A DNA stretch of 64,000 nt from Diadema antillarum (GCF_040938485.1 NW_027270908.1:2790001-2854000), one strand, 5' to 3'. Numbered from the stretch's first letter, positions 37,501-64,000 are shown. Notes: generated by a model from the sequence alone, not told the origin. A program made the numbers and translations.

Positions 37501-40500
37501 CATTGTTTCTTCCCTGAAGAGTGCCATCTAGCTAGTGTTTGAGTATGTATAGTCTGAAGTGGCATCGAAGACACCTGCTAGTATCAAATTTCGTGTTTAC
37601 ACATGCGTATGATTGGTTATTACTAGTTTCCTTTTTCTTTTTTAAGTGAAATTACTGATTGGGATAAATTTCACAAATCCCCCCTCCCTCTGTGCATTGC
37701 AATAATCCTTCTTGAGAATGGTTTTGCATTGTCATGAAGTCAAAGGAAGACTTCGTTTCTAAGACTTGCAGGGAAGGAGTACCAGATTTGCCGGAAACAT
37801 CGTGTCGAAATCAGTTTTCAGTCGTATAATAGAGAACTGAGGTTATAATACAAGTCAATAATTATTACCTTACACTAGTCTTCTTTCAACGAAATGCATG
37901 GATTTGATTTGACCTGACAGAGAACGACTTCGATGGATGCCCGCCAAAGTTCCTCCAGAAGCCTCGCTCCATCAACATCGACGAGGGGAGCAGCGTCACG
38001 CTCTCCTGCAAGATCGACGGCGAGCCGCTGCCCACGATCACGTGGATCAAGGACGGCCGCCCCATCGAACCCGGAAGGAGATTCAAGATGGAGTCGTCGG
38101 GTATTTCCGGCACGACGCGCTCGCTCAACATCCCCACGGTGCTGTCGACGGACGCGGGGAGCTACACGTGTGTGCTGCAGAACGAGTTCGGGACCGAGCA
38201 GTGCAGTGTGTCGGTGGTGGTCAAACCCCTGGAAGAGGAACAAACGGACTTCCGTTCACTGCTGAAATCCAGGTATGTTGACTCACCATGTCTTTTTCCT
38301 GTCGGCATCTTTGTTGCGTAAGGTGCCGAAGATAGTTTTTATGTTTATAGTTGAGTGATAATTAGATGAATGTTCGAGTATAATCAAATGCCTATAGGCG
38401 TGCAAGAGACTGACGGCATTTAGTTCGCTGTGAGTTCACGGTCAGATGACATTTCATCAGAAAACATAATTACGACATTAAAGTGAATTGCTCATTTGTC
38501 ACTTCTATAAGGAAAATGAAATCATCATAAGGTGACTGGGAGACACATCGAATATCTAAATGATGTGTATGTTATGTTCTGGCGAAAATGCANNNNNNNN
38601 NNNNNNNNNNNNNNNNNNNNNNNNNNNNNNNNNNNNNNNNNNNNNNNNNNNNNNNNNNNNNNNNNNNNNNNNNNNNNNNNNNNNNNNNNNNNNNNNNNNN
38701 NNNNNNNNNNNNNNNNNNNNNNNNNNNNNNNNNNNNNNNNNNNNNNNNNNNNNNNNNNNNNNNNNNNNNNNNNNNNNNNNNNNNNNNNNNNNNNNNNNNN
38801 NNNNNNNNNNNNNNNNNNNNNNNNNNNNNNNNNNGCTTATTTTTTGCTGCTCACGATAAGTGGACTGCTGCTTAAAGTGTGTGACGCCTATATTTCTATC
38901 GCTCTTGTTTGATGAAAAACGTTACAGATGGCGGAGGCACAGATTCAAGGGCTGCTACACATATTATTCGGCTTGTGAATCATTGATGAATGTTTATTTA
39001 TTCCACTGCAGACCCCGTCTCCAGAACATCTCAAACTCCCCAAACAACATCTCCAGCGACCGAAGCGAAGTGGACCAGGTCGACTTCCGTCACGTGCTCA
39101 CGCGCCACGTGCAGACCAAGAAGCGGCCGGTCTTCACCCGTCCCCTCACTGACCTCGAGGTGATGGAAGGCGAGCCCGCCTGCTTCGAATGCCACGTGGA
39201 CGCGTCCCCGCCCCCTATCATCACGTGGACGCTCAACAAGAAGGAGATCAAGGAATCCAAGTACTTCCAAATGAGCTACACAGGTGAGATAGTGTTTATA
39301 CAGCGTGAGCATTGGGTTGTCCCGTTGTACATTTCATCACTCAAATCGCTTAGTGATCAAAACACCTTTTTCAAGTCGGGTGAGATGCGTGTTCTGCCTG
39401 TCACAGGGAGCTCTAGATTTTCGACGCGGACGTTGAGACGACGAATGCGTTGGCCATTCTCCTCTCTCCTTGCATTGTGTTGCAAAGTAGCTTTCACGGA
39501 GATGCAGCCAGTACAAAGTAAAATTATGTTCCCGTATCATTATTGCATCAAGTAGCTCTCTGCGTCGTAAATGTAAGCGGAAGCAAAAATGGCCCGAAAC
39601 TGACCATGAAAGCTAAGACGACGCGATATCAATTTTGATGAGCAATTTTGAGCATACGCAGAATATTTTGTCCACATGGTGAACATCTAAAGCTCCATAG
39701 CAAGAAAATGTCAACGGATTGCGACATTTGAACGTTCGTAGCTAAAGTCGTGATATCGGACTGCATGGCCTCCACAAGGAACTGTCAATTATGGCCTGAA
39801 CACAAACGTGGTTAGCGCCCTCTATCATTTTAAAGGTTGATTTCATCGTGTCTTTGTTTTTATTGTTTTACTTTTTGAGTAAAGCGACTTCTGTTTTTTC
39901 GGGTGAGTTAGAAAGTACAGTGACTTTTAGTAAAATAGAGAAAGTACCGTGATCATTGCTGCAACAAAATCTTAGAGGAGCAGTGAAAGTTGAGATAAGA
40001 CCACTTGATCATAAGTAGCAATAATTTTGACATTGAAATTTGAATAGAGATTCGTTCCAGGAGGGTGTGTGTAATAGCGTTGTCACACTTTTCAACATTC
40101 AAGTGACAGTTATTACATGATTTCTTAATGAGCAAATTATACGTCAAATGCCAGCATCATAAGGCTATTATGTCTGTGGTTAAAAACACAGCCAGTATGT
40201 CATTCCTAGTAATAAGGCTACTAAAGGTACAGGGCTACTCCTGCATAAGGATACAGAGCGTAAAAAAGAAAACTTACTAAAAAAAAACACGCACAAACGT
40301 AGGGCACAGCTGCAGCATCACAACCAATACAGTAATGAGAGGACATCTGTAGAAATATTCACCAGACTTTCAGCCTAAATCTCCGTCCTAATATTCATAA
40401 ATTTCGCTGTAGGTAGGTGTTCTTTTCGAGGGAGAAAATGGCATGATCGCATTATCTGCCTTGTAAGTCAGTTATGAGCGCGCTGAACAAATTTAATTGT

Positions 40501-52500: not shown

Positions 52501-55500
52501 GAGTTCATCTACCTGTATACGTTGACCCATCGGTGTGTTGTGTTAACGCTCTACACTCGAAAAAAAAAAAATCAGCCTGTCACGATTTTATTGTTGCCAG
52601 TTACAAACAAGGGGACACCACAGCGTACATACGTTAAGTGTACATTATCACCGTTGTAATCGCGACAGTAAATACGTCTACACTTCGCCTGTTTGTAAAG
52701 CTCTGTATACAAGGCGTGATTGGATTTTAAGCCCATGCACAACACCGTTCCTCATATTGTTTCCAAATGTAAGGTCCAGAGGTACGTCTGATTAACTTGT
52801 TTCCGTGGTATTCCTCACTAATTAGCATAAATGTGGTCAATGACGAGGGACGAGGAGTTAATTGAAAAAAAAAAAAATCGTCAAATGCACCTCTGTAGAA
52901 ATAACGTTGCAATTAAGTACAAGTCCGGAGCTAACGGTCGGTTTTGGTCGACAAACCCCACAATGCTCCTTTTTTTTTTTTTTAATACGGCACTCGGTCA
53001 GATATTGGGTCATCACTCATAAAATCCAAGGGGAAGGAATATAGGATGCATTTCTTCGCAATTACGTAATACTGTATAAATATTATCACATTACCCACAA
53101 TGAAGACGTTTTGCTTGACCTATATAGTATACCTTTTGAAAAATTCATCAGTCGCAGCTAAAATGAGGTCGATTTTTTTTTTTTTTTTTGGGGGGGGGGA
53201 CATAAAAGATGTTCCAGCAAATAAGGGTCACTACCTTAGAATAGACCAAGGGTATCATCAAGTCTAATATTATTATGCCAAACCAGTTTGTGTTCTGAAA
53301 TGTCACGGCGCAGACAAGAACAAACCTCAAAAGGGAGGCGGTAATCTCGAACGGTCTGCCGCATAATCCTATTCTGTACTCCCCATGACATTTAAAGTGG
53401 AGCGTATTAGTGCATGTAATAAGAGGGCATGTTTACGGGTTCGTAAAACCATCGGTCCGGTCCCTTACGCACTGCCTATCCTTTGCCAAAACATTAACCG
53501 ACGAAATTTAGTATCACATATTTGCAACGTTAAAATAATCATATACATGTACATCAAGTTTGTCACTCAGTCGTATGATTTCAGTGAATTATGTCTGTAG
53601 TTTATGAATCAATTACTCAAAATTGTAATTATATATCTCTGAGTGATGGCATGAACTTTCTATATTTTAATGACGGGCAAATGAAAAACAGTCCTTTAAG
53701 CCATAATATTGGGCTGTTATTTTATCATGTTAAACATATATGCGAAGTCAATAATCAGGCCAAAATGGTAGTATTTAAGGATACTTAAATTTGCAATGTT
53801 CATATTTACTGTGTACAAATCATGACATTATAGAGTCATAGAGAGGAAAGAATCCAAAGGTCATTGACCTGTCAAGGCTGTTCCTGGAAAATTAACCCTT
53901 TGAGTGGCGATTGACACATACAGAAATCCCACATCGTTGAACACATTGTCTGAAGTCCCTTGCACACAAAGGATAAAACAAAAGTGTAATATTTTTTATG
54001 TCCGGAAGTTTATCTCAAATATTGCCGTACATCTCTACTTTAAAAAAAAAAGATTCCAGTTGGCATTTCACGAAATGAAATATTTATAATTTCAATCCCA
54101 CCTTACATGTCGTTGAACAGCAGCCGACACAGAATACTATATTGCTTTCTTTTTGCTTCTTTTTTTTGTGTGTAAATATATGATACTATACTGTCTTGTG
54201 TATTGTTTGCTGGTACATTTACTCTTTTACCTCGGTGGTGGAAATAAATGAAGTATAATGAAAACGAAATACAACTGTACTGTAAATGACTACAATCGAA
54301 AATGTCTCATTATGACGTCATCTACAGCTCCTGCCAGCATCAAGGATGCCCCTCGCTCCGTCCAGGCAATGGCTGGCAAGGATCTGACCATCACGTGCAA
54401 CTTCGTGGCCATCCCCGAGCCGGACGTCGTGGTGTGGAGCAAGAACCGCAAGACCATCAAGGAGGACGACAGGATCGAGGTCGACGAGACGGAGACGAGC
54501 ACGACGCTGATCGTGGGCAAGGCCACGCACGCCGACGCCGGCCGCTACACCCTGCTGGTGGAGAACGAGCTCGGCTCCGATGAGGCTACCATCAACGTCA
54601 GCGTACTAGGTGAGACGACAGACCAAGCCGGCATTTTGTGTTTGTTTGTTTGTTTGTCTGTTGTTGTTGTTTTGTTGGTGGTGGCGGCGGTGGTGATGGT
54701 TGTGTTGGTGGTGATGCTGACTTTTATTGGGGGGGGGGGGGGGTGGTGTTCGACATCAGCAAAGATTTGTCTCATTTCGTAATATTAATACATTATAGCA
54801 CCTATCTGTAATGGTAAAAATATGAATGTATGCACATTCTTTTCTTCACATGAAACACCCTGGATTTACTGAAATAGCCGGTCGTGGTTCTCCCACTGTG
54901 ACTAGCAATGGGCAGCAAACGGTATCAACCAGGCACATTGTGCCATACGCTTGAATGAATGAATTTCATTAGGGGTCACCAGCACAGATCATTATTGAAA
55001 TTGACAGTGGTGTTAGCAGTGATATGATGCAATTTTTGCCCTTCGTTCGATTCCAGACAAACCCGACCCGCCGGTGGGCAAGCCGATCGCTTCACACGTT
55101 ACTCGCGAGTCACTCACTCTCTCATGGACCGGCTCCAGCTACGACGGGGGTAGCCGAATCACCGGGTACGTCATTGAGATGCGTACCGCTGGGGACAGAC
55201 CCGAGGGATGGCAACGCGTGGCCACCGTCTCCAACACCTCCCACTGTCTGGAGGACCTAAAAGCGGAAACAACATACATCTTCCGGATCAGCTCGGAGAA
55301 CGAGTTTGGGATCAGCGAAGCGGGCCAGGAATCCGATGAGATACTGACGGTTGTGAAGGAGCAGAAGAGTAAAGCGCAACCAGCGAAATCCGAGTCTGAC
55401 TCCGATCGTAAGCCAACTCCTGTTTATTGCTGCTTGTTGTATAGAAAGGAATATAAGCAGAAAGAAGATAAAGAAACACATGAAGCTGTGGCGGAGTGCC

Positions 55501-58500
55501 TTTGATTAATTTTGAAAATGAGAAAAATCCATGTTGAAATAAAGGATGAAGACAGATTCAAAGTTAGGTGATTATGTGATTGAAAAGTAATGTCAGGATT
55601 CATCCCTAAATTTGTCGTTTGTTCAAACACTAGTGTGATAATGAATGATATGTGTTAGTCCTAACAATGTTGAATTGAGGATATACATCGTACGTGTCTT
55701 TATTTATTATCATACTTCAGATTGTGATATACACCTACTGGTAATGAACTTTAAAGCATCAGCATAGTACAGTAGCACACTTTTTTTATGGGCATAGCCG
55801 CATATACGTCGCATGGGTGTTGATGCGTGAGCGATTGGTTAGTCTAAGTATACAGACTTGAAATTGTCGCGTGAAGATTTATCGCCACAGGCAGAATCAT
55901 CGTATCTCGGGTTTTGCCTTTAGCCAGTCGGAGACTGGCATAAAGTGAACGAGTTTCATCACCCATCCATACAAACCATGCTTATCTATTACCGCCCTTT
56001 GCGATGATAGTAGCGACCTTTAGTTCTGCGACGCGAACGCGAAGGCGACGCAGACCCCCGCCGGACGGGGAAACAGCTGTCTCGAGTATTTGCAGAACAC
56101 CATTTTTTTGCCAAAATGGCGTCGTCTTACTGTTCGCGTCGCAGATCTAAAGCTCGCTCGTTTCGTCTGTGATTGGAAGTTCATGGTACATAATCATGAA
56201 AACGTTGGCATACATGCTAAAAATGTGCTGTTAGAGGTGCTTTGTTGACTTGTAATTGCCACCGACATATCATAGACAAGGAAAATGGTAGTAATTTGTC
56301 TTGTTTTGTTTCGTTTGGTTTTGTTCTCTTTAATGTAGAAGATGCAGAGCAGGTCGAGTTCCGTCACGTGACCATCAAACCCGACAAAGAGTTCTCGGAG
56401 AAGTACGCCATCAAGGAGATTCTCGGAAAGTAAGTTCTGAGAGTCAAAGTTTATACAAACTTGCCTAATAAAGCTTGTCCCCGACTATCGCGTATAGCTT
56501 GCCCTAGATTTTCCTCCTACAATAGTTTTGTCTGTCATGGCAACAACTAAATGCATACAAAATACATTGCCGGTATAGAAATAAGTTGAGTATACAGGTG
56601 GATGCAATAGCTTGTTACAAAGTCCTTAGATGAGGGATAGAATAGAGAGTTAAATACAGTAGCAAACCTGCTTATATTATAATAATAGTTCATTACCAGG
56701 TCATGCAGGGGAGGGGGGGTATGTCCACACATTTGAAGACATGAAACAGGTGTATTAAATAGGATGATCTGACCCATAAATTATCGATGCACTGCCAGGG
56801 GTCGATTCGGCACAGTACACAAGTGCGTGGACAAGGTGACCGGTAAGGAGTACGCCGCTAAGATGATCAAGACCATCAAGGCTAGCGAGAAGGAGGCTGT
56901 GAGGAACGAGATCGAGGTGATGAACAAACTCCATCACGCCAAGCTCCTGCAATGCCTCGACGCCTTCGAGTCACCCAAGCAGATGATCATGGTGCTGGAG
57001 ATGTGAGTATATGGACCTAAATAATACCCATGTGTGTGTCCGCCGGGTGTCTATGTGTGTGTCCGAGTGTCTATATGTATGTCCTAGTGTCTTTGCGTGC
57101 GTATGTCTACAATGTTTATGGCTGACGTGTTTGTGTGTGCGTATATGTCTATGTTTGTGTGTGCCTCTTTTTGTGTCCGTGTCCGTGTATGTGTCAGTGT
57201 CTCTGAGACTGAGCGTGTCACAGGGAGTGTCTGTCTGTTTTATTTGTGTTTGTGTACTGATACACATTGCAGAGGACATAATGAAATGAGAAGCTCGAAA
57301 GTCTAGATCCTCCAGGGCCAATATTGAATTCATAAATGTGAAATATTGATAGGCAGATTTATTCACAACGAGTAGAGTTGAAGTGTAACTTAGAGGAAGT
57401 GATGAGCTTAATGTGCACGTGGACAGAAAAATTCTGAAATATCAAAAATTGTCAGTATAACGAAAGTTATTGCAACAAACAATAGTTGTATGCCAGCTGT
57501 CCGTAACCACTTGTAGCCGATCAGCTTTTTCTTTGTCAATCTATCAATTATTAAGGTTTCAGGTTGATAAAATTGTCAATGTGACCTGTTATAATTTGCC
57601 TCTTGTGTGTATGTGTGGCGCAGTGTGAACGGCGGAGAGCTGTTCGAGCGGGTCATCGACGACGACTTTTGCCTGACCGAATGTGACGTCATCAAGTTCA
57701 TGCGTCAGATCAGTACGGGCGTGCGTCACATGCACCAGCAGAACATTCTCCACCTGGACCTCAAGCCCGAGAACATCCTCTGCGTCGACAAGACGGGCAG
57801 CCGCATCAAGCTGATCGACTTCGGCCTAGCGAGGGCGTTCAACCCCCGCGAGAGCACCAAGGTCATGTTCGGCACGCCAGAGTTCGTCGCCCCGGAAGTA
57901 ATCAACTACGACGCCATCGGCTTCACCACGGACATGTGGAGCGTCGGGGTCATCTGCTACATTCTGTGAGTGCTCGCCGAAGAAAGATTCTCAAACTTTA
58001 TCTATTGATATTACATGCGATTTTTATCTGTTTATTTATTTATTATTATTATTATTATTTCTTCTTTTTTTGGGGGGGGGGGATAAAGAAAGGTTTATGA
58101 TAAAGGAAAGAAAAGTCTATGCCATGTGAAGAGGTGTTTGTGTGACATCTTAATCAATTTTTCCACATATTTTTCTGGTATAGTTTTGTGCCAAGGTAAG
58201 TCACGGATACCGACATAATATATCAGAGCATTACATATATATCATACTTTACCGAGTTTCTACTTCTCAAGTTGATGTAGAGCGGTGCGGTATGGGTACC
58301 ATGCCCAATTCAGCTACCTCCAACTCACTGTGTAGCTACGTCTGAGCAGTAAGTTGTTTTTTTATCATAAAGTCCATTATCTGGATATACACGCATAGAT
58401 AGTGAAAACCTCGTGATCGCTGATGTAACATTATGATTATCGTTTCGTCCGCCTTCCGCCCCCAGGTTGAGCGGCTTGTCTCCCTTCATGGGCGACAACG

Positions 58501-61500
58501 ACGCCGAGACGCTGAACAACGTGACCCTGGCCGAGTGGGACTTCGAGGACGAGGCCTTCGACGCCATCTCCGAGGACGCAAAGAGCTTCATCGACGGTCT
58601 GCTCATCCAGAAGAAAGAGTTAGTCCGCAAATCCATTGTTTGTTTGTTTGTTTTTCTCTCGAGCTGATTTTAATGTTGTATGTCATATTGCTATTTTAGT
58701 GATAGGATCCGCTCGTCATACATACACTTATTGTAACGCTTTTATATCTTACTTTCCTTAACTTCAAAACGCAATAACTTTACTGCCGATTTATCTTGGT
58801 TCTTATTCATGACATCAAAGGTTTAGACGGTGTCAATAGCTCAGTTTCAAGAGTAATTTCAAGTTACTTAGAAGATGAAACATAGATCATTTTCGGTTAC
58901 TTTTGGGGAGAGAGGAGGAAAAAATGGATACATCTTCAACCTAGTCTCGTATTCCTGTTCAAAAAAAACAAATTAATATATAATACTTAATTATTTCCCA
59001 AACATACCTTTTCAAATACTCTACAGTCCTTCCTTTAAACTTCAGAATAATAATCTATACTTCAAAAAATGCCATTACATGGGATGCTCTATTTTGTTTT
59101 GTTTTCTTGGGGGGGGGGTGTCAATATTATTAGTGCTATGCTTCTTTTGTATAGTCGTTTTGTATTGTTTGTCTCTATGAGGATAATTTGTGGTTCGATT
59201 ATTGAAAAAGGAATTGGAATGAGTACTGCAGTAGACTGTAGATAACTTCTTCGTATCCATGGTTACAGGGAAAGGATGACAGCCGATGGGTGTCTGGAAC
59301 ACAAGTGGCTGCGAAACGACTCCAGTGACCTCAAGAGCAACAAGATCAGCACTGCCAAACTCAAGAACTTTGTGGCAAGGAGAAGGTGGCAGGTACGTTC
59401 ACCTATACCTAGAATATTCCTAAACCAATCATGGCTGAATTTATCGTGAAGGGATGGATTTACCAAGTTTTGAGGGCGATGCAAAAAAAAAACCAACTAC
59501 AACAAAAAGCATATCAATTAAAATGCGGAAGGTCATCAAGTAAATCATGTTCAGCACTGCTAGGAATTACCAATGTTAATACTCAAATGATGCCACCGTC
59601 TTTGAGGGCTACTTGAAATGATTATACAAACAAAAGGAAATATAATGAATTTTGCAAACCCAGTGCTGCAGCGATCTTTGTATTTTTTTACTGCTCTCAT
59701 TAAAGTGGATTTCTTTCAAGATGGCTTTCTCTTTAAAGCTGCTTTATTGGGAATTGGTGCATAAAAAGCTGTGCTTTTTACATCTCGGAAGAGAGTATCT
59801 TTCTCTTTCTCAAATAAGTTTCCCCTTGTTCCCCTTTGTCGCTTCCGTTGCTTTCAAATTCCATATCTATATTCGTTTTTCTTCAATTTCGTTCATTGGT
59901 AGTTGTCATTGTGTACGTATTACTGTGATATCTATTTCCCTTTATGTCATAGTCTGGTATAATCTCCCTCTTGTTTCCCCCCCCCCCCCCAAGCCCCATC
60001 TCCCCTCAAGTTCGTAACATCCTGTATATGTATATGTGTGTATGTGGTGGATATCTTTTCCTTGGGTAATCATTACATGCCATATAAAAGGGTTGGTGAT
60101 AAATTTGGGATGGTTGGGGGAATTTCGCTTTCCATATACTTGTTAATCAAAAGATTGTTCTTATGTTCTTTAGCCATTTTCTCTTTCTCTTTGTATAGAT
60201 ATCTCCCAAGTTATACATGTACTCTCTGTCGACACCAGAGTATATATTGCTTATTTACCTTTGTATATACCTCAAAACGGGCTTATAACAGATCTAAATG
60301 AGTTGCATATAATATATAATGTTTGTTGGTATCTTTTATTGTCTTATTTTAACAATACCGAAGGGTTCCAATGGCAACTCATGCAGCATAATTATTCTCC
60401 TTTTCAACATTAAAAGAAAATTACCGGATAAACTTTGACAAAGCACATGAACAGGTTACCAATTTGAAAGTCTTATCCTGAAGAATACTTGACATAAGAT
60501 ATGTTTTAGGGGGGTTGTTATTATTGAGGGGGCATAAAAAATTCCTTTCTTTCTGTAGCCTATACTCTATTTATGTTTCATCTTGATCTATTTTCTATGG
60601 ACCTACCGTATGTTTTCTTAATTATTGTTCCCGTCTTTCATGTTGTTTGTTCGTTTACCTGTTCTTCGTACGGAGTCTTCTTTCTTTCCTTTCTTATAAA
60701 GAAAAAAGTTCAAAAGAGCTTTTTGCCAAAGGCTGATAAACTTTTTGTTATGAATGTTACTCATGTGTGTCGCAAGTTTTCAAAGTTAAAGGGTAGAAAT
60801 CGTTTTCACATCTTTCTGTTGAAGCAGAGTGGATCAAACGAGTTAGATTCGAGCTCGTCTGATGTGGAAGAATCAACGGACGATGTACGTGTACACGTGG
60901 TATACGGTGCTCGCTTTTTGTGTGCGGTGCTAATACTAACAATCACCAACAACATGTTTGCTTTTATTATTCAAAACAGAGTGGTTTGGGGCGCAATATA
61001 GCCAATGGCGTGGTACTAATATTCGAGGGTTATTTCATATCTTATATCATCTGCGAAGAGGAACTACTAACAGTTTTTTTTTGTTTATAAACCTAATAGC
61101 TCATCTTTTCCTTTTAAGAGTGGGATTGAATTTTTTATGCAAGACTGAGGTTTGAAGTGTTCACAAATCATTCATAAATGCGATTATGATTATCGTCCGT
61201 CGTTGCATTCAATCATAATTTTGTGCTTTACATATCGATAACCTGCTCAATCATTATTTATTCATTTGTCAGTATATTAATAAACTGGACATGCACGCAA
61301 TTAAAATCACGGTTAATCTACGGGTTAAAGAGTCTCTCAAAGTATACATATAATGGGATAGGAATGATAAATATGTCTTGGTTAAAGTCACGTGGGTGCA
61401 AATCAATGTCACCATCCGAGACATGACGTAACAGTGTATTACTTTAGGTCGTCACGGCTCATCTTCACGCATCGTACTGATGCCTCGTAGACACTCAAGA

Positions 61501-63206
61501 AAGATAAAACTGAAGACTTTAAAATAAACGTTTAAAATGCACCTTTATACAGTGGACTCCCGTTATCACGAAGTCCTCGGGACCCACACCGGCAGTTTTC
61601 AAACGTTATATCGAAATTTCTTCATAACCGAACAAATAAACAATAAAAAACAGAGAGCCATTATGTTGCGGCCTGAAAGTTTACTTCGTTGTAACCGGAA
61701 TTTCGTTATAACCGTGTTCGTTATAACGGGAGTGCACTGTAGCTCTTCTCTCATTTGAAGCTCTGATATGACATATTTCGATCGAATAAAACATTGGAAT
61801 TCAAGGTTAATTTTCGACCCTTTCATATGAGAGAAAATAAATGAATCTATCATTAATTCGTGAGAGCCACGTTTTTTGGGGAAAGAGGACGGGATATAAG
61901 GAAGCACTTCTAAAGATCAGCCACTGACGTATTTCGGGCATTTATGAGATGGCTAGTCACGTAAGCACAACTCATGGCCTTGTTAACTCATACCTCATAT
62001 GCAGTGATGCTTCAGTTTATTACTATAATAATTTCTAATTTCATATTCTGATTGACCCAATGACGTCACTCATGTAACATTTCTAAGCTCGTTTTATCTA
62101 ATGCTTTTACTCCATATTTGAGCATCATTATCATAATTTTTTTATATAATTTTGAATAAATTGCTGAAATTTCTTGGAGTGCAACTGGTGTATGCAGAAC
62201 CCAGATCTGACACAGGAAAGCAAAAACTCGTATTCTGTTTAAAATTACAAATTACGCCAACAAGAATTGCGAATTAACATATTTCATTAATTTGAATTAA
62301 TGTTGATTTATCAAGGAAAAGAAAAACTCGTCAGTATACAGAGTGGCGTGAACCAAGTATCATTGAAGAACAAGTGCAACAACTGAACTTCACTGCTCAG
62401 TCATTTCTCGATTGAATGAGACCAATGCTGATATGTATCATCAATTCTAGGTTCTAAATACATTACTAATCGTCATCAACACCATCTCATTTCCACAGAA
62501 AACTGCCACAGCCGTTCGTGCCATCGGGCGTATGGCGTCGCTTTCGCTCTTCGGAAGCGCCAAAAAGTCTGCCGACACCAAGGCCCAGTCCCCGGCGCTT
62601 CCGTCGCCGAAGGAGAAGGTGGAAAGTGAAGCGGCGCTTCCAACGCCTCCCAATAGCGACATCCAAGCAAAGACCGAGTCTTCTGCAGCGCCATCTACGG
62701 CGAAGACCGAAAACACTAAACTCGAGAGCGAGCTTATCGTGCGAGAGGATAGCGTGAAGCTTAATGCGCAACCCAAAGTAGAGGATGTGAAATTAAATGA
62801 CAGCCGATCAGCAAACGACAACAAAAAGGCTAGCGAGGAAGCGGCGAGCGACGGCGCTGACGAAGAAGGAGACGAGGTTGATGGTCTGAGGAAGGATTTG
62901 AACCAGAACATTCCGGGAGCGCCTCACTTCACAAAGGAGATGGTTGACTGCGAGGTCTTCGAAGGAGACAGCGCGCGCTTCGACTGCCGAGTGGCAGGTG
63001 ACCCAGAACCGGATATCAAGTGGTTCCAAGATGGCGTCGAGATCGAGGAGAGCGCTCGATTCATCTTTGACTACGACGACGGCGGCCTGTGCTCGCTGAT
63101 CATCAGGAGGATCCAGGAGGACGATGAGGGGGAGTATTCGATCATGGCAACCAACAGCAAGGGGGAGGCGACATGTGTGGCGGATCTACTGGTGGATGGG
63201 TTCTAG
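10435..63206 (+). CDS. MYLK: Long myosin light chain kinase (MYLK1-like), 21-exon model, about 2351 aa: 11 Ig, 2 DFRxxL, Fn3, CAMK-family kinase, CaM-binding helix, telokin-like Ig
   Basis: Hand-spliced GT-AG exons with consistent phases at every junction, summing to 7056 nt. Diagnostic sequences: YTLLVENELGS..DKPDPP..LTLSWTGSSYDGGS; GKGRFG; HLDLKPEN; FGTPEFVAPEVINY; ARRRWQKTATAVRAIGRMAS. The 5' start is the least certain part. Confidence 0.93.
11023..12614 (+). CDS. MYLK: Exon 2: Ser/Thr/Pro-rich low-complexity region plus Ig1
   Basis: Acceptor ttttttccccattcacAG. The frame is open from 11024, upstream of the ORF-track start at 11402. Contains the I-set Ig PAFIKKP..FSC..VTW..DAGLYTC. Donor T|GTGAGT, phase 1. 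An alternative acceptor at 11032-33 is possible. Confidence 0.9.
18683..19249. mobile_element. TTAA-flanked MITE (Kolobok/T2-like AGG termini)
   Basis: Perfect 20-bp TIR AGGACAAGTTCACCTTCATA / TATGAAGGTGAACTTGTCCT, longer imperfect inverted arms, TTAA on the left and TAAA on the right. Superfamily inferred from termini only. Confidence 0.8.
24139..24196. repeat. 28-29 bp tandem duplication
   Basis: taaccaccataaaa(a)ctcttgaagagggg occurs twice, adjacent. Confidence 0.9.
25782..26075 (+). CDS. MYLK: Exon 3: Ig2
   Basis: ccccctctcAG acceptor; PPFFLQKLSDCEV..LQC..VAW..DDAIYTC; donor G|GTAGGT; phase 1-1. Confidence 0.93.
26213..26436. repeat. About 100-bp direct repeat pair separated by four telomere-like CCCTAA units
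   Basis: Copies at 26213-26313 and 26338-26436 (about six differences); spacer ccctaa ctctaa ccctaa acctaa. Confidence 0.9.
26968..27037. repeat. (CTGT)n microsatellite
   Basis: Direct reading. Confidence 0.95.
27300..27479. repeat. Purine-rich GAA/GAG low-complexity tract running into a gap
   Basis: Direct reading; Ns follow at 27480-27636. Confidence 0.9.
27480..27636. other. Assembly gap
   Basis: Run of N. Confidence 1.
29052..29139 (+). CDS. MYLK: Exon 4: short acidic linker (EIDPPTKSADENTVFNNNPLHIDESDIDP)
   Basis: Not in the ORF track. tttgcAG acceptor and AG|GTGAGA donor. Phase 1 in and phase 2 out, exactly bridging exons 3 and 5. Confidence 0.85.
29523..29896. repeat. Array of 15-bp units AGATACCnnGGTAAT with a palindromic core
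   Basis: Units at 29548, 29563, 29581, 29596, 29637 and 29882, plus a degenerate one at 29523. Confidence 0.8.
29847..29856. promoter_or_regulatory. Perfect CArG box (SRF motif) CCTTATTTGG
   Basis: Matches CC(A/T)6GG. Function unproven; such 10-mers occur by chance in a window this size. Confidence 0.3.
30220..30545 (+). CDS. MYLK: Exon 5: Ig3
   Basis: tattctAG acceptor, phase 2; PQFVTRP..RFCC..VTW..DSGMYTC; donor G|GTAAGC. Confidence 0.92.
31008..31457 (+). CDS. MYLK: Exon 6: linker plus Ig4
   Basis: Tandem TAGCAG acceptor (start 31008 or 31011); PEFLARP..KFVC..VTW..DTGSYVC; donor A|GTAAGC. Confidence 0.92.
31469..31513. repeat. (GAT)15 microsatellite
   Basis: Direct reading; starts 11 nt after the exon 6 donor. 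Confidence 0.97.
32587..32729. mobile_element. Short Tc1/mariner(pogo)-type MITE
   Basis: TA|tagtgaaacctg ... caggtttgactg|TA with internal repeats of ggtggccg. Confidence 0.7.
33382..33818. mobile_element. Second copy of the TTAA MITE family
   Basis: TTAA on both flanks; right TIR TATGAAGGTGAACTTGTCCT identical to the copy at 18683; left arm alignable (cacatcagtgaaagttt..aaaagttat). Confidence 0.8.
33934..34813. mobile_element. 880-bp palindromic dimer of a 440-bp Tc1/mariner-type MITE
   Basis: TA|CAGTATGTCCC ... GGGACATACTG|TA. Monomers 33934-34373 and 34374-34813 are inverted and each has its own TIRs of about 25 bp. Confidence 0.88.
35773..36072 (+). CDS. MYLK: Exon 7: Ig5
   Basis: ttttgccAG acceptor; PEFLEKISDVTV..FVC..VHW..PEDEGEYSC; donor G|GTGAGC. 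Confidence 0.93.
36500..36720. repeat. Trinucleotide low-complexity tract (GTA/GTC/ATG/ATA)
   Basis: Direct reading. Confidence 0.85.
36864..36998 (+). CDS. MYLK: Exon 8: linker plus N-half of Ig6
   Basis: tctgtcacAG acceptor; KPEFVQKLKDIQAIDGNPLSLPVRVKG; donor G|GTGAGA. Confidence 0.88.
37260..37457 (+). CDS. MYLK: Exon 9: C-half of Ig6
   Basis: tcttattAG acceptor; GSPDPEVRWF..EVYPDDAGVYTC; donor G|GTGTGT. Confidence 0.9.
37921..38272 (+). CDS. MYLK: Exon 10: Ig7 plus first DFRxxL motif
   Basis: The ORF track misses the correct frame at the 5' end. Spliced frame reads ENDFDGCPPKFLQKPRSINIDEGSSVTLSC..TDAGSYTC..EEQTDFRSLLKSR. Donor AG|GTATGT, phase 2. Confidence 0.93.
38593..38834. other. 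Assembly gap in the intron between the two DFRxxL exons
   Basis: Run of N. Confidence 1.
39012..39283 (+). CDS. MYLK: Exon 11: second DFRxxL motif plus N-half of Ig8
   Basis: ttccactgcAG acceptor, phase 2; QVDFRHVLTRHV..PVFTRPLTDLEV..FEC..ITW; donor G|GTGAGA. Confidence 0.92.
39405..39698. mobile_element. Degenerate MITE with AGGGAGCTYTAGAT termini (possibly PIF/Harbinger-like)
   Basis: Left agggagctctagat, right atctaaagctccat; termini related to the element at 56012. TSD not clear. Confidence 0.5.
42314..42540. repeat. Two (TTGT)n microsatellites
   Basis: Approximately 42314-42372 and 42498-42540. Confidence 0.9.
43742..43858 (+). CDS. MYLK: Exon 12: C-half of Ig8
   Basis: Not in the ORF track. 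ctccaattcAG acceptor; DNVAKLLIAEAFPEDEGDYTCTATNDVGQVSCSADLTVQ completes the Ig begun in exon 11; donor G|GTACCA. Confidence 0.92.
43890..44640. repeat. Degenerate (GATA)n tract spanning a gap
   Basis: gata/gaca units around Ns at 43975-44121. Confidence 0.85.
43975..44121. other. Assembly gap
   Basis: Run of N. Confidence 1.
44793..45446 (+). CDS. MYLK: Exon 13: Pro/Val/Glu-rich linker plus Ig9
   Basis: ctatttcacAG acceptor; PPAFLEGGLRDVTV..LKC..IHW..DDAGTYTC; donor G|GTAAGT. Confidence 0.93.
48151..48200. repeat. (CTT)n microsatellite
   Basis: Direct reading. Confidence 0.97.
48248..51672. mobile_element. 3.4-kb non-autonomous DNA transposon with 4-bp TSD and subterminal 14-mer repeats
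   Basis: TTCT|GGGCAATTCCG ... CGGAATTGCCC|TTCT; eight copies of GGTAACGGAATTAC clustered near the two ends; no intact transposase ORF. Confidence 0.8.
54328..54609 (+). CDS. MYLK: Exon 14: Ig10 (pre-Fn3 Ig)
   Basis: tctacAG acceptor; ..DAGRYTLLVENELGSDEATINVSVL; donor G|GTGAGA. Confidence 0.93.
55057..55407 (+). CDS. MYLK: Exon 15: fibronectin type III domain
   Basis: ttccAG acceptor; DKPDPPVGKP..LTLSWTGSSYDGGSRITGYVIE..YIFRISSENEFGIS; donor C|GTAAGC. Confidence 0.94.
56012..56158. mobile_element. 147-bp MITE with 27-bp TIRs
   Basis: agcgacctttagttctgcgacgcgaac / gttcgcgtcgcagatctaaagctcgct (two mismatches). TSD not evident. Confidence 0.75.
56339..56429 (+). CDS. MYLK: Exon 16: pre-kinase linker and start of the kinase Gly-rich loop
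   Basis: Long polypyrimidine tract plus TAG; QDAEQVEFRHVTIKPDKEFSEKYAIKEILG(K); donor AA|GTAAGT, phase 2. Confidence 0.92.
56799..57002 (+). CDS. MYLK: Exon 17: kinase N-lobe
   Basis: No + strand ORF in the track. GRFGTVHKC..YAAKMIK..NEIEVMNKLHH..MIMVLE; donor AT|GTGAGT. Confidence 0.95.
57030..57260. repeat. Degenerate GT-rich low-complexity tract
   Basis: Direct reading. Confidence 0.85.
57624..57965 (+). CDS. MYLK: Exon 18: kinase catalytic loop and activation segment
   Basis: VNGGELFERVIDDDF..HLDLKPENILC..IKLIDFGLAR..FGTPEFVAPE..DMWSVGVICYI; donor CT|GTGAGT. Confidence 0.97.
58466..58618 (+). CDS. MYLK: Exon 19: kinase C-lobe
   Basis: LSGLSPFMGDNDAETLNNVTLAEWDFEDEAFDAISEDAKSFIDGLL; donor GA|GTTAGT. 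Confidence 0.95.
59269..59392 (+). CDS. MYLK: Exon 20: end of kinase, autoinhibitory segment, N-half of CaM-binding helix
   Basis: Not in the ORF track in this frame. ERMTADGCLEHKWL..KISTAKLKNFVARRRWQ; donor CAG|GTACGT, phase 0. Confidence 0.94.
61550..61739. mobile_element. 190-bp Tc1/mariner(pogo)-type MITE
   Basis: TA|CAGTGGACTCCCGTTATCACGAA ... TTCGTTATAACGGGAGTGCACTG|TA (23-bp TIR, two mismatches, TA TSD). Confidence 0.88.
62057..62121. promoter_or_regulatory. Motif cluster in the last intron: CCAAT, CRE (TGACGTCA), one-mismatch CArG (CCATATTTGA)
   Basis: CCAAT 62057-61, TGACGTCA 62061-68, CCATATTTGA 62112-21. Motif match only. Confidence 0.25.
62499..63206 (+). CDS. MYLK: Exon 21: C-half of CaM-binding helix, linker, telokin-like Ig11, stop
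   Basis: catttccacAG acceptor, phase 0; KTATAVRAIGRMAS..PHFTKEMVDCEVFEGDSARFDCRVAGDPEPDIKWF..GEATCVADLLVDGF, then TAG. Confidence 0.95.
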   Translation, partial: KTATAVRAIGRMASLSLFGSAKKSADTKAQSPALPSPKEKVESEAALPTPPNSDIQAKTESSAAPSTAKTENTKLESELIVREDSVKLNAQPKVEDVKLNDSRSANDNKKASEEAASDGADEEGDEVDGLRKDLNQNIPGAPHFTKEMVDCEVFEGDSARFDCRVAGDPEPDIKWFQDGVEIEESARFIFDYDDGGLCSLIIRRIQEDDEGEYSIMATNSKGEATCVADLLVDGF

Positions 63207-64000
63207 AGTTTAGTCTTGGCATTATCAGCAGATGAAACCTTGAAGATCTAATGTGCGCATGGACGTTAAATCAGTATAACACACGAAAGTAGTGTGGGCA
63301 AATGTCTGTTGTGCTATGTCCTTTGTGACGTCAAACAGCAATAACTGCGGTCAAGCTTACAGCAATGACAATTACATGTCTCTGCGAGAACGCAGCCAGA
63401 TACAGACAAATTGGATATGGCTTTGCGGCTCTTCTGCAGACCACGTGCACAAGGGTCGAGTCAAAGTTGAAAGATATGATTGGTGCTTCCGAAATTAACT
63501 TTGTAATGGCGATTTTTTTTTTTCTAATCACAGAAGCAAAGTAAACAGCAATAAGACTCTGTTTAGTAGATAAGATTGAGTGGCTTCAACAGCGCGGGGA
63601 ATGTCCGATTTTCCCAGGGCTAGAAAGATACACCGCCGGACAGGGGGTTCGCCCAGTTTGGAAAGATCTACAACAGTTTGCTGTTACAAGCCAACCTCGA
63701 TAGGAGCAGAGCGAGGTGTCAAAAGGAGCATTTGTCTACCTTATGGAGAATAAGGTGAACCTATGTTGCATATCTTTTTATTCTTATGAGAACAAAATAA
63801 TACGTCAATACATTTTTGACAATATTCTTGTTTTACCTATCCTACATGCGGCGGAATGTTCTTTTCTTTTTCTTTGAATGGTGTTTCAGCCACATCAAAC
63901 TACAGGTTAAAATTTGAGACTTTTGTTATATTACCAGAGGTAACTTATTCAAACATGTATTCATTACGATATTTTGTATTATCGTTTTATAGAACATGGA
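63207..64000 (+). other. Probable 3' UTR of the MLCK gene
   Basis: Follows the stop codon. I saw no AATAAA, so the transcript probably extends past the window. Confidence 0.45.

What the first reader, a model, noticed from the sequence alone, without database searches (positions are those of the whole stretch)
59375..63206. Telokin-like unit: intron splits the CaM-binding helix and a Met follows, as in vertebrate MYLK
Seen: ARRRWQ|KTATAVRAIGR-M-ASLSLFGSAKKS..QSPALPSP..Ig, with a phase-0 intron inside the 1-8-14 (W-V-M) CaM helix and an ATG at 62532 opening a 224-aa ORF. Established: vertebrate telokin is transcribed from a promoter in the intron interrupting the CaM-binding domain and starts at a Met just after RAIGRLSS, followed by basic-Ser and Ser-Pro phosphosites. 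The RxxS inhibitory site is retained (RMAS). Differences: longer linker and no poly-Glu tail. Inference: an independently expressed telokin-like protein may exist outside vertebrates.
Basis: partly seen in the sequence, partly recalled or inferred. Interest (0 to 1): 0.7.

Follow-up and report, generated by a model that had tools for sequence, protein, structure and literature searches.

The report
Sea-urchin MLCK tail exon, telokin-like
This is the ordinary last intron and last exon of a sea-urchin myosin light chain kinase gene, built like its vertebrate counterpart, and nothing available here shows that the tail is also made as a separate telokin-like protein.

Summary
The sequence features are real. 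Exon 59269-59392 ends ..ARRRWQ. A phase-0 GT..AG intron of 3106 nt follows (59393-62498). The last exon (62499-63206) opens KTATAVRAIGR-M-ASLSLFGSAKKS, and the ATG at 62532 opens a 224-aa ORF. That ORF is about 130 disordered residues followed by an I-set Ig domain. The Ig's best sequence and fold match in the PDB is telokin (46-49% identity).

The genome is a sea urchin (Bindin family, 213 bits).

The intron position is old. One metagenome contig shows it at DNA level (RRKWQ|gt...cag|KTGNAIRALGR). Six other invertebrate ORFs that read through the acceptor CAG imply it.

The Met is the position-14 hydrophobic anchor of the 1-8-14 calmodulin motif. It is M in most invertebrate homologues, I in one, and L in the vertebrate peptide. 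The vertebrate telokin Met lies three residues further on. Kinase function alone therefore explains the Met.

Independent expression could not be tested. Weak indicators point against it:
- no canonical CArG box in the intron
- five upstream ATGs behind the only TATA-like site
- C at -3 of the ATG
- no poly-Glu tail
- no annotated short isoform among the database hits

Verdict: a conserved MYLK gene structure that could have pre-adapted the locus for telokin. It is not evidence of an invertebrate telokin. The scan's only other note on this feature is on this same stretch.

The parts
59269..59392 (+). Penultimate coding exon. It holds the end of the kinase tail, the autoinhibitory segment and the first half of the calmodulin-binding helix (..KLKNFVARRRWQ). 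W at 59387-89 is anchor 1.
   Evidence: ORF and translation. Aligns to the DAPK1 autoinhibitory/CaM segment that ends ..ARKKWK. Acceptor ttacag| lies at 59268.
59393..62498 (+). Last intron: 3106 nt, phase 0, GTACGT...CCACAG, 35.7% GC. It splits the calmodulin helix between Q and K.
   Evidence: The same position is shown at DNA level in L014 and implied in P0003, P0005, P0006, P0007, P0008 and P0009.
61548..61741 (.). MITE-like repeat inside the intron: 194 nt with 25-nt terminal inverted repeats that are 92% complementary. Very high copy number.
   Evidence: the repeat finder. Summed word depth of 2-6e5 and hundreds of loose ends at its borders in three DNA runs.
62112..62149 (+). The only promoter-like motifs in the proximal intron: CArG-like CCATATTTGA (one mismatch) at 62112 and TATATAA at 62143. 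No more than chance in AT-rich DNA.
   Evidence: Motif scan. There are 0 canonical CC(A/T)6GG in the intron, 4 TATA-like sites on the + strand, and 5 one-mismatch CArG-like sites.
62499..62534 (+). Second half of the calmodulin-binding helix, KTATAVRAIGRM. V at 62514-16 is anchor 8 and M at 62532-34 is anchor 14. The M is also the ATG of the 224-aa ORF.
   Evidence: The only PDB hits are smooth-muscle MLCK peptides KTGNAVRAIGRLSSM bound to calmodulin.
62535..62570 (+). Phospho-regulatory segment ASLSLFGSAKKS. The Ser of RMAS aligns with vertebrate site A, and KKS resembles site B (telokin Ser13). The nearest relative keeps it almost unchanged (MASLSLFGSSKKS in P0013).
62571..62921 (+). Disordered linker of about 115 residues with S/T-P motifs. 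An acidic patch (ORF residues 102-117, nt 62835-62882) sits just before the Ig domain. The linker is poorly conserved even in the nearest relatives.
   Evidence: pLDDT of 42-55 over residues 1-135 of the exon product. Alignment A1.
62922..63194 (+). Telokin-type I-set immunoglobulin domain (ORF residues 131-221).
   Evidence: Pfam I-set 1.6e-25. Telokin 1FHG/1TLK at 102 bits. Model pLDDT 94-97. Telokin is the top Foldseek hit, TM 0.91-0.92, 46-49% identity.
63204..63206 (+). Stop codon TAG, three residues after the Ig domain. No poly-Glu tail. No AATAAA or ATTAAA in the 794 nt up to the window end.

Best explanation
The stretch is the 3' end of the sea-urchin orthologue of MYLK, the smooth-muscle/non-muscle myosin light chain kinase.

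The penultimate exon ends with the autoinhibitory segment and the first half of the calmodulin-binding helix. An ancient phase-0 intron follows. The single last exon then encodes four things in order:
- the second half of the helix
- a Ser-rich phospho-regulatory segment
- a long disordered linker
- the C-terminal telokin-type Ig domain, which in vertebrates binds myosin

As part of the full-length kinase, the helix (W1, V8, M14) would bind Ca2+/calmodulin to release autoinhibition. The RMAS serine would lower calmodulin affinity when phosphorylated. The Ig domain would tether the kinase to myosin filaments.

The ATG at 62532 is there because residue 14 must be hydrophobic, not because it starts a second protein. 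The domain order, the motif and the homology are shown. The biochemical roles are inferred from the vertebrate enzyme.
For: - Gene context: Ig, Fn3 and protein-kinase exons lie directly upstream, in MYLK order.
- The two exons read in frame across GT..AG and give the 1-8-14 motif.
- The exon-21 start matches only smooth-muscle MLCK calmodulin-binding peptides in the PDB.
- The exon-20 end aligns to the DAPK1 autoinhibitory/CaM segment.
- The Ig domain's best sequence and fold match is telokin.
- The same intron is seen at DNA level in an unrelated metagenome contig, L014..KRFMARRKWQ|GTGTGT, about 770 nt of intron, then TTTTTGCAG|AAAACTGGG...
- The same intron is implied in six other invertebrate ORFs, where similarity starts exactly at K after an acceptor-derived CAG.
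- Residue 14 is M in the window, P0003, P0005, P0006, P0007, P0008 and P0009. It is I in L014 and L in the vertebrate peptide.
- All invertebrate homologues carry helix half, linker and Ig in one exon and end within about 5 residues of the Ig domain.
- The genome is echinoid: Bindin PF02084 at 213 bits, none in 14 control genomes.
- No protein from NCBI or UniRef in the 123-392 aa range appeared among the hits, so no short isoform is annotated there.
Against: - Nothing contradicts it, but it is not exclusive. A full-length kinase exon can also serve an internal transcript, as in vertebrates.
- No RNA evidence of any kind was available, so even the exon 20-21 splice is inferred from sequence and homology.
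- The last intron is several times longer than the neighbouring introns of the kinase region, which leaves room for regulatory DNA. Part of that length is a MITE.
- The segment MASLSLFGS-KKS just after the helix is strongly conserved in the nearest relative. That fits a regulated N-terminus as well as kinase regulation.
Confidence: 0.8

Rival explanations
1. Telokin-like gene within a gene. A promoter in the last intron drives a short mRNA that runs unspliced into the last exon. It is translated from ATG 62532 into a 224-aa non-catalytic protein that binds myosin and modulates light-chain phosphorylation, as vertebrate telokin/KRP does.
For: - The architecture would permit it. An in-frame stop at 62448 means ATG 62532 is the first in-frame start for any transcript that begins in the proximal intron.
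- A CArG-like site (62112) lies 31 nt before a TATATAA (62143).
- The product would keep the RxxS and KKS serines and the telokin-type Ig domain.
- The N-terminus MASLSLFGS-KKS is nearly identical in the closest relative, while the linker is not.
- Vertebrate telokin does arise from a promoter in the corresponding region of MYLK, intron 28/29.
Against: - No transcript evidence. The three runs served were genomic contigs colinear across the intron-exon border.
- There is no canonical CArG box in the 3.1-kb intron, whereas the vertebrate promoter is SRF/myocardin-driven.
- The motifs found are at chance level in AT-rich DNA.
- A start near the TATA site would leave five upstream ATGs (62192, 62300, 62416, 62425, 62433).
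- The ATG has C at -3.
- The Met is explained by the calmodulin anchor, is replaced by Ile in L014, and is not at the vertebrate initiator position.
- There is no acidic C-terminal tail. From my own knowledge of the KRP literature, not checked here, that tail is needed for myosin binding.
- Comparison of the two haplotypes shows no extra constraint in the proximal intron.
- No short annotated isoform appears among the database hits.
- No paper in the searched library describes an invertebrate telokin.
Confidence: 0.1
2. The long intron hides an alternative cassette exon (60828-60884, 57 nt, in frame, SGSNELDSSSSDVEESTDD). When included, it would insert 19 acidic/Ser residues into the calmodulin helix and give a calmodulin-insensitive kinase isoform.
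For: - The segment has an acceptor ttctgttgaagCAG and a donor GTACGT, the same hexamer as the true exon-20 donor.
- Its length is a multiple of three and it is open in phase 0.
- It is 46% GC against 36% for the intron.
- It is single copy in the genome apart from the other haplotype.
- The two haplotypes do not differ across 60800-60899.
Against: - By a simple splice-site score, five other segments in the same intron do as well or better.
- The shuffle control in that script was run at a threshold that was too lax (the donor score of a shorter segment). It therefore does not calibrate this exon, though shuffles passed the lax bar easily.
- The haplotype comparison has no power at this scale.
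- No RNA or cross-species support was available.
Confidence: 0.07

Closest known systems
Vertebrate MYLK (smooth-muscle/non-muscle myosin light chain kinase), C-terminal regulatory segment
   Same: - The domain order Ig-Fn3-kinase-autoinhibitory/CaM helix-Ig is the same.
- The CaM motif ARRRWQKTATAVRAIGRM compares with the vertebrate KTGNAVRAIGRL peptide: anchors 1-8-14 are kept, and the RxxS serine is kept.
- An intron interrupts the CaM-binding region.
- The C-terminal Ig is 46-49% identical to telokin.
   Different: - Anchor 14 is Met, not Leu.
- The whole tail is one exon, whereas vertebrate telokin spans the last three exons.
- The linker is about 115 residues rather than about 40.
- There is no poly-Glu tail.
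Telokin / kinase-related protein (KRP), the independently transcribed C-terminus of vertebrate MYLK
   Same: The ORF from ATG 62532 covers the homologous region: post-helix serines, linker and the same Ig domain. An intron lies immediately upstream, where the vertebrate promoter sits.
   Different: - No evidence of its own transcript.
- No canonical CArG box.
- The Met is three residues upstream of the vertebrate initiator and is part of the CaM helix.
- The acidic tail is absent.
- The predicted size is about 24 kDa against 17 kDa.
Invertebrate MLCK-type genes seen as anonymous contigs (P0001-P0010 clusters, L014)
   Same: They share the same phase-0 intron before K of KxGxAxRAxGR, GR(M/I)xS, a single terminal exon with a variable low-complexity linker, and an Ig domain that ends the protein.
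   Different: Linker sequences cannot be aligned between lineages. The window shares the MASLSLFGS-KKS motif only with its nearest relative (P0013).

Membership tests
MYLK / smooth-muscle-type MLCK orthologue | CaMK-group protein kinase domain directly upstream of the regulatory tail | tested here: met
   Pkinase 7.7e-37 for exon 57607-57969. Further kinase ORF pieces lie at 56.8-58.7 kb.
MYLK / smooth-muscle-type MLCK orthologue | Autoinhibitory segment followed by a basic 1-8-14 calmodulin-binding helix | tested here: met
   W-V-M at positions 1-8-14. Only MLCK CaM-binding peptides match in the PDB. The DAPK1 CaM segment aligns to exon 20. The exons were searched separately and the joined peptide was not searched.
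MYLK / smooth-muscle-type MLCK orthologue | C-terminal I-set Ig domain of telokin type | tested here: met
   Telokin is the top hit by sequence (single domain) and by fold.
MYLK / smooth-muscle-type MLCK orthologue | Ig and Fn3 modules N-terminal of the kinase, and DFRxxL actin-binding motifs | tested here: inconclusive
The Ig (54300-54620) and Fn3 (55074-55400) modules are confirmed.
Telokin / KRP (independently expressed protein) | Own promoter in the MYLK intron and a separate short mRNA | not testable with these tools
Telokin / KRP (independently expressed protein) | SRF/myocardin-responsive CArG element in the promoter | tested here: not met
   There are 0 canonical CC(A/T)6GG in 59393-62498, only one-mismatch sites.
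Telokin / KRP (independently expressed protein) | Initiator Met just after the CaM-binding helix (RLSS-M) | tested here: not met
   The Met aligns with Leu-14 of the vertebrate helix, three residues before the vertebrate Met. It is Ile in L014.
Telokin / KRP (independently expressed protein) | Acidic poly-Glu C-terminal tail | tested here: not met
   The ORF ends ..LLVDGF-stop. No invertebrate homologue has the tail.
Telokin / KRP (independently expressed protein) | Basic-Ser (PKA/PKG) and Ser-Pro (MAPK) sites near the N-terminus | tested here: inconclusive
   KKS at ORF residue 13 is conserved in P0013. The SP/TP motifs are present but lie in low-complexity sequence and cannot be aligned.

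The most novel reading that the evidence does not exclude
The last intron of the sea-urchin MYLK gene holds a working internal promoter, so a non-catalytic telokin-like protein of about 24 kDa is made in an echinoderm. The kinase/anti-kinase 'gene within a gene' arrangement would then predate vertebrates.
Probability: 0.1. Interest if true: 0.6.

Novelty: new member of a known kind. Interest (0 to 1): 0.25.

Why it matters
The stretch shows that the parts vertebrates use to make telokin were already in place in the deuterostome ancestor, and probably earlier. Those parts are an intron inside the calmodulin helix, a start-capable codon at the end of the helix, and a self-contained linker-plus-Ig tail. 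Evolving telokin then needed only a promoter in that intron. This is a modest evolutionary point about a well-studied smooth-muscle regulator. It would become notable only if an internal transcript were actually found in urchins.

Tried and rejected
1. RNA test. The look-up of sequencing runs returned only three runs of unknown kind. Laid on 58300-64000, their contigs run unbroken across the intron-exon border at about 95% identity, so they are genomic DNA and say nothing about expression.

The contigs behind P0001, P0002 and P0013 could not be read.

3. The listing of cluster members gave no names or accessions.

4. Haplotype footprinting. C526 is the other haplotype of C20. Divergence per 100 nt shows no sign of constraint in the proximal intron (8 differences in 62200-62499 against 7 in the 700-nt exon). 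Power is low.

5. Promoter motifs. No canonical CArG or MEF2 site was found. TATA-like, E-box and GATA sites are at the density expected for AT-rich DNA.

6. Candidate 57-nt cassette exon. It is not exceptional by splice-site score.

7. Rfam scan of 59000-64000 found nothing.

8. Protein Atlas gave only generic Ig clusters.

9. Literature. No paper in the library describes telokin outside vertebrates. One search was wasted by a loose term setting.

10. The primary papers on the vertebrate intron position were not held. Codon-exact identity with the vertebrate intron therefore rests on my memory of Gallagher & Herring 1991 and Collinge et al. 1992.

Each exon was searched by reference.

Full report
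**What is there**

- The penultimate exon (59269-59392) ends ..KLKNFVARRRWQ, with the Q codon at 59390-92.
- The donor is CAG|GTACGT at 59393 and the acceptor is TTTCCACAG| ending at 62498.
- The intron is 3106 nt, phase 0 and 35.7% GC.
- The last exon (62499-63206) begins KTATAVRAIGR-M-ASLSLFGSAKKSADTKAQSPALPSP.
- The ATG at 62532 opens a 224-aa ORF that ends at TAG 63204-63206.
- W, V and M fall at positions 1, 8 and 14 of the joined helix.

Each was searched by reference.

**Homology**

Upstream ORF pieces carry an I-set Ig (54300-54620), an Fn3 (55074-55400) and protein-kinase exons (Pkinase 7.7e-37 for 57607-57969).

The exon-20 product aligns to the autoinhibitory/calmodulin segment of DAPK1, ending ..ARKKWK.

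The first 24 residues of the last exon hit only four PDB sequences. All four are smooth-muscle MLCK calmodulin-binding peptides, KTGNAVRAIGRLSSM. The E-values are 0.2-0.9, which is expected for so short a query, but the exclusivity is telling.

ORF residues 131-221 are an I-set domain (1.6e-25). Telokin (1FHG, 1TLK) is the best single-domain sequence match at 102 bits, against about 57 bits per titin domain. An AlphaFold model built on alignment A1 has the first ~135 residues of the exon product disordered (pLDDT 42-55) and the Ig domain at pLDDT 94-97. Foldseek against the PDB puts telokin first, with TM 0.91-0.92, rmsd 0.7-2.8 and 46-49% identity.

The stretch is therefore the C-terminal regulatory tail of an MYLK orthologue.

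**Organism**

I tested this. The echinoid sperm protein family Bindin (PF02084) is present at 213 bits, in two copies, and rings in none of 14 control genomes.

The assembly is 1.75 Gb and holds both haplotypes. Contig C526 mirrors C20 gene for gene, and its copy of the last exon is 99% identical in protein.

**The intron is ancient**

The word search with the 224-aa ORF found ten short proteins, all anonymous ORFs from ENA or Logan contigs.

In six of them (P0003, P0005, P0006, P0007, P0008, P0009) similarity to the window starts exactly at the K of K-x-G-x-A-x-R-A-x-G-R. The residue before it is always Q, preceded by unrelated, pyrimidine-codon-rich residues. That is the in-frame reading of a ..YYYCAG acceptor. 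No L, A, T, I or V codon can end in AG, so the intron must end right after that CAG, in phase 0.

One metagenome contig proves this at DNA level. L014 reads ..KNLKRFMARRKWQ|GTGTGT, then about 770 nt of intron, then TTTTTGCAG|AAAACTGGG.. = KTGNAIRALGRITS.

The intron inside the calmodulin helix is thus a shared, old feature of MLCK-type genes. It is not a special likeness between this urchin and vertebrates.

The statement that the vertebrate telokin promoter lies in MYLK intron 28/29, upstream of the last three exons, is supported. That this intron interrupts the calmodulin-binding exons rests on my knowledge of Gallagher & Herring 1991 and Collinge et al. 1992, which the library did not hold.

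**The Met**

Residue 14 of the motif is M in the window and in six invertebrate homologues (GRMAS, GRMSS, GRMAC). It is I in L014 (GRITS) and L in the vertebrate peptide (GRLSS). It is the third hydrophobic anchor for calmodulin.

The vertebrate telokin initiator is the M three residues further on, in RLSS-M. The ATG at 62532 is therefore accounted for by kinase function and is not positionally homologous to the telokin start.

The Ser of RMAS does align with the vertebrate site-A Ser. The KKS at ORF residue 13 is conserved in the closest relative, MASLSLFGSSKKS in P0013. Both sites also matter in the full-length kinase, so they do not discriminate between the readings.

**Test of independent expression**

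This could not be done. The look-up of sequencing runs served three runs of unknown kind from one study. Their contigs lie unbroken across the intron-exon border (for example 61715-63410 and 61715-64000) at about 95% identity.

The indirect indicators are weak and lean against an independent transcript:
- There is no canonical CArG box in the intron, although the vertebrate promoter is SRF/myocardin-driven.
- The only suggestive pair is a one-mismatch CArG at 62112 and a TATATAA at 62143. This is at chance density for AT-rich DNA. A start there would leave five upstream ATGs before 62532.
- The ATG has C at -3.
- An in-frame stop at 62448 does mean that ATG 62532 would be the first in-frame start of any proximal-intron transcript.
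- The two haplotypes show no extra conservation in the 300 nt before the exon.
- No hit in the 123-392 aa range came from NCBI or UniRef, so no short isoform is annotated there.
- No paper in the searched library reports telokin outside vertebrates.
- The ORF, like all invertebrate homologues, lacks the acidic tail.

**Other content of the intron**

- A 194-nt MITE-like element with 25-nt inverted ends sits at 61548-61741, at enormous copy number.
- Nothing matches an Rfam family.
- An in-frame 57-nt segment at 60828-60884 has good-looking splice sites. It is single copy but is no better than five other chance segments in the same intron.

**Verdict**

However, the two clues taken as pointing to an independent product, the intron and the Met, are both explained by ordinary conservation of the kinase gene.

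I put about 0.8 on 'plain terminal exon of the urchin MYLK orthologue' and about 0.1 on a real telokin-like transcript. The interest lies in the modest evolutionary point that the locus was pre-adapted for telokin. The decisive experiment is simple (RNA 5' ends, or a reporter in urchin embryos) but could not be run here.

Noticed in passing
window 61548-61741: MITE-like element of 194 nt with 25-nt terminal inverted repeats (92% complementary). Summed word depth is 2-6e5 in three DNA runs, with hundreds of contigs breaking at its ends, so it is one of the most abundant repeats of this genome.
   Followed up: partly
window 60828-60884: A 57-nt in-frame segment (SGSNELDSSSSDVEESTDD) flanked by ..ttctgttgaagCAG and GTACGT, 46% GC in a 36% GC intron, and single copy. 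If spliced in, it would split the calmodulin helix. By a crude splice score it is no better than five other segments of the same intron.
   Followed up: partly
G000 contig C526:989883-995410 versus window 59205-64000: The assembly (1.75 Gb, 2963 contigs) carries both haplotypes. C526 is colinear with C20 in reverse, with about 2% mismatches plus indels here. Every feature of this genome may therefore appear twice.
   Followed up: partly
window 29847 and 41424: These are the only two canonical CArG boxes, CC(A/T)6GG, in the 64-kb window. They lie on either side of the region where another reader noted DFRxxL actin-binding motifs (38247-39099). They could mark an internal promoter for a short kinase isoform, as in mouse Mylk, or be chance.
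   Followed up: no
window 63207-64000: There is no AATAAA or ATTAAA in the 794 nt after the stop codon. The 3' UTR probably runs beyond the window end or uses a variant signal.
   Followed up: no
L014:1880-2700 (metagenome contig Ga0224511_10063891): An anonymous animal contig in an environmental metagenome carries an MLCK-type gene end with the same phase-0 intron and Ile instead of Met at anchor 14. Its organism is unknown.
   Followed up: partly
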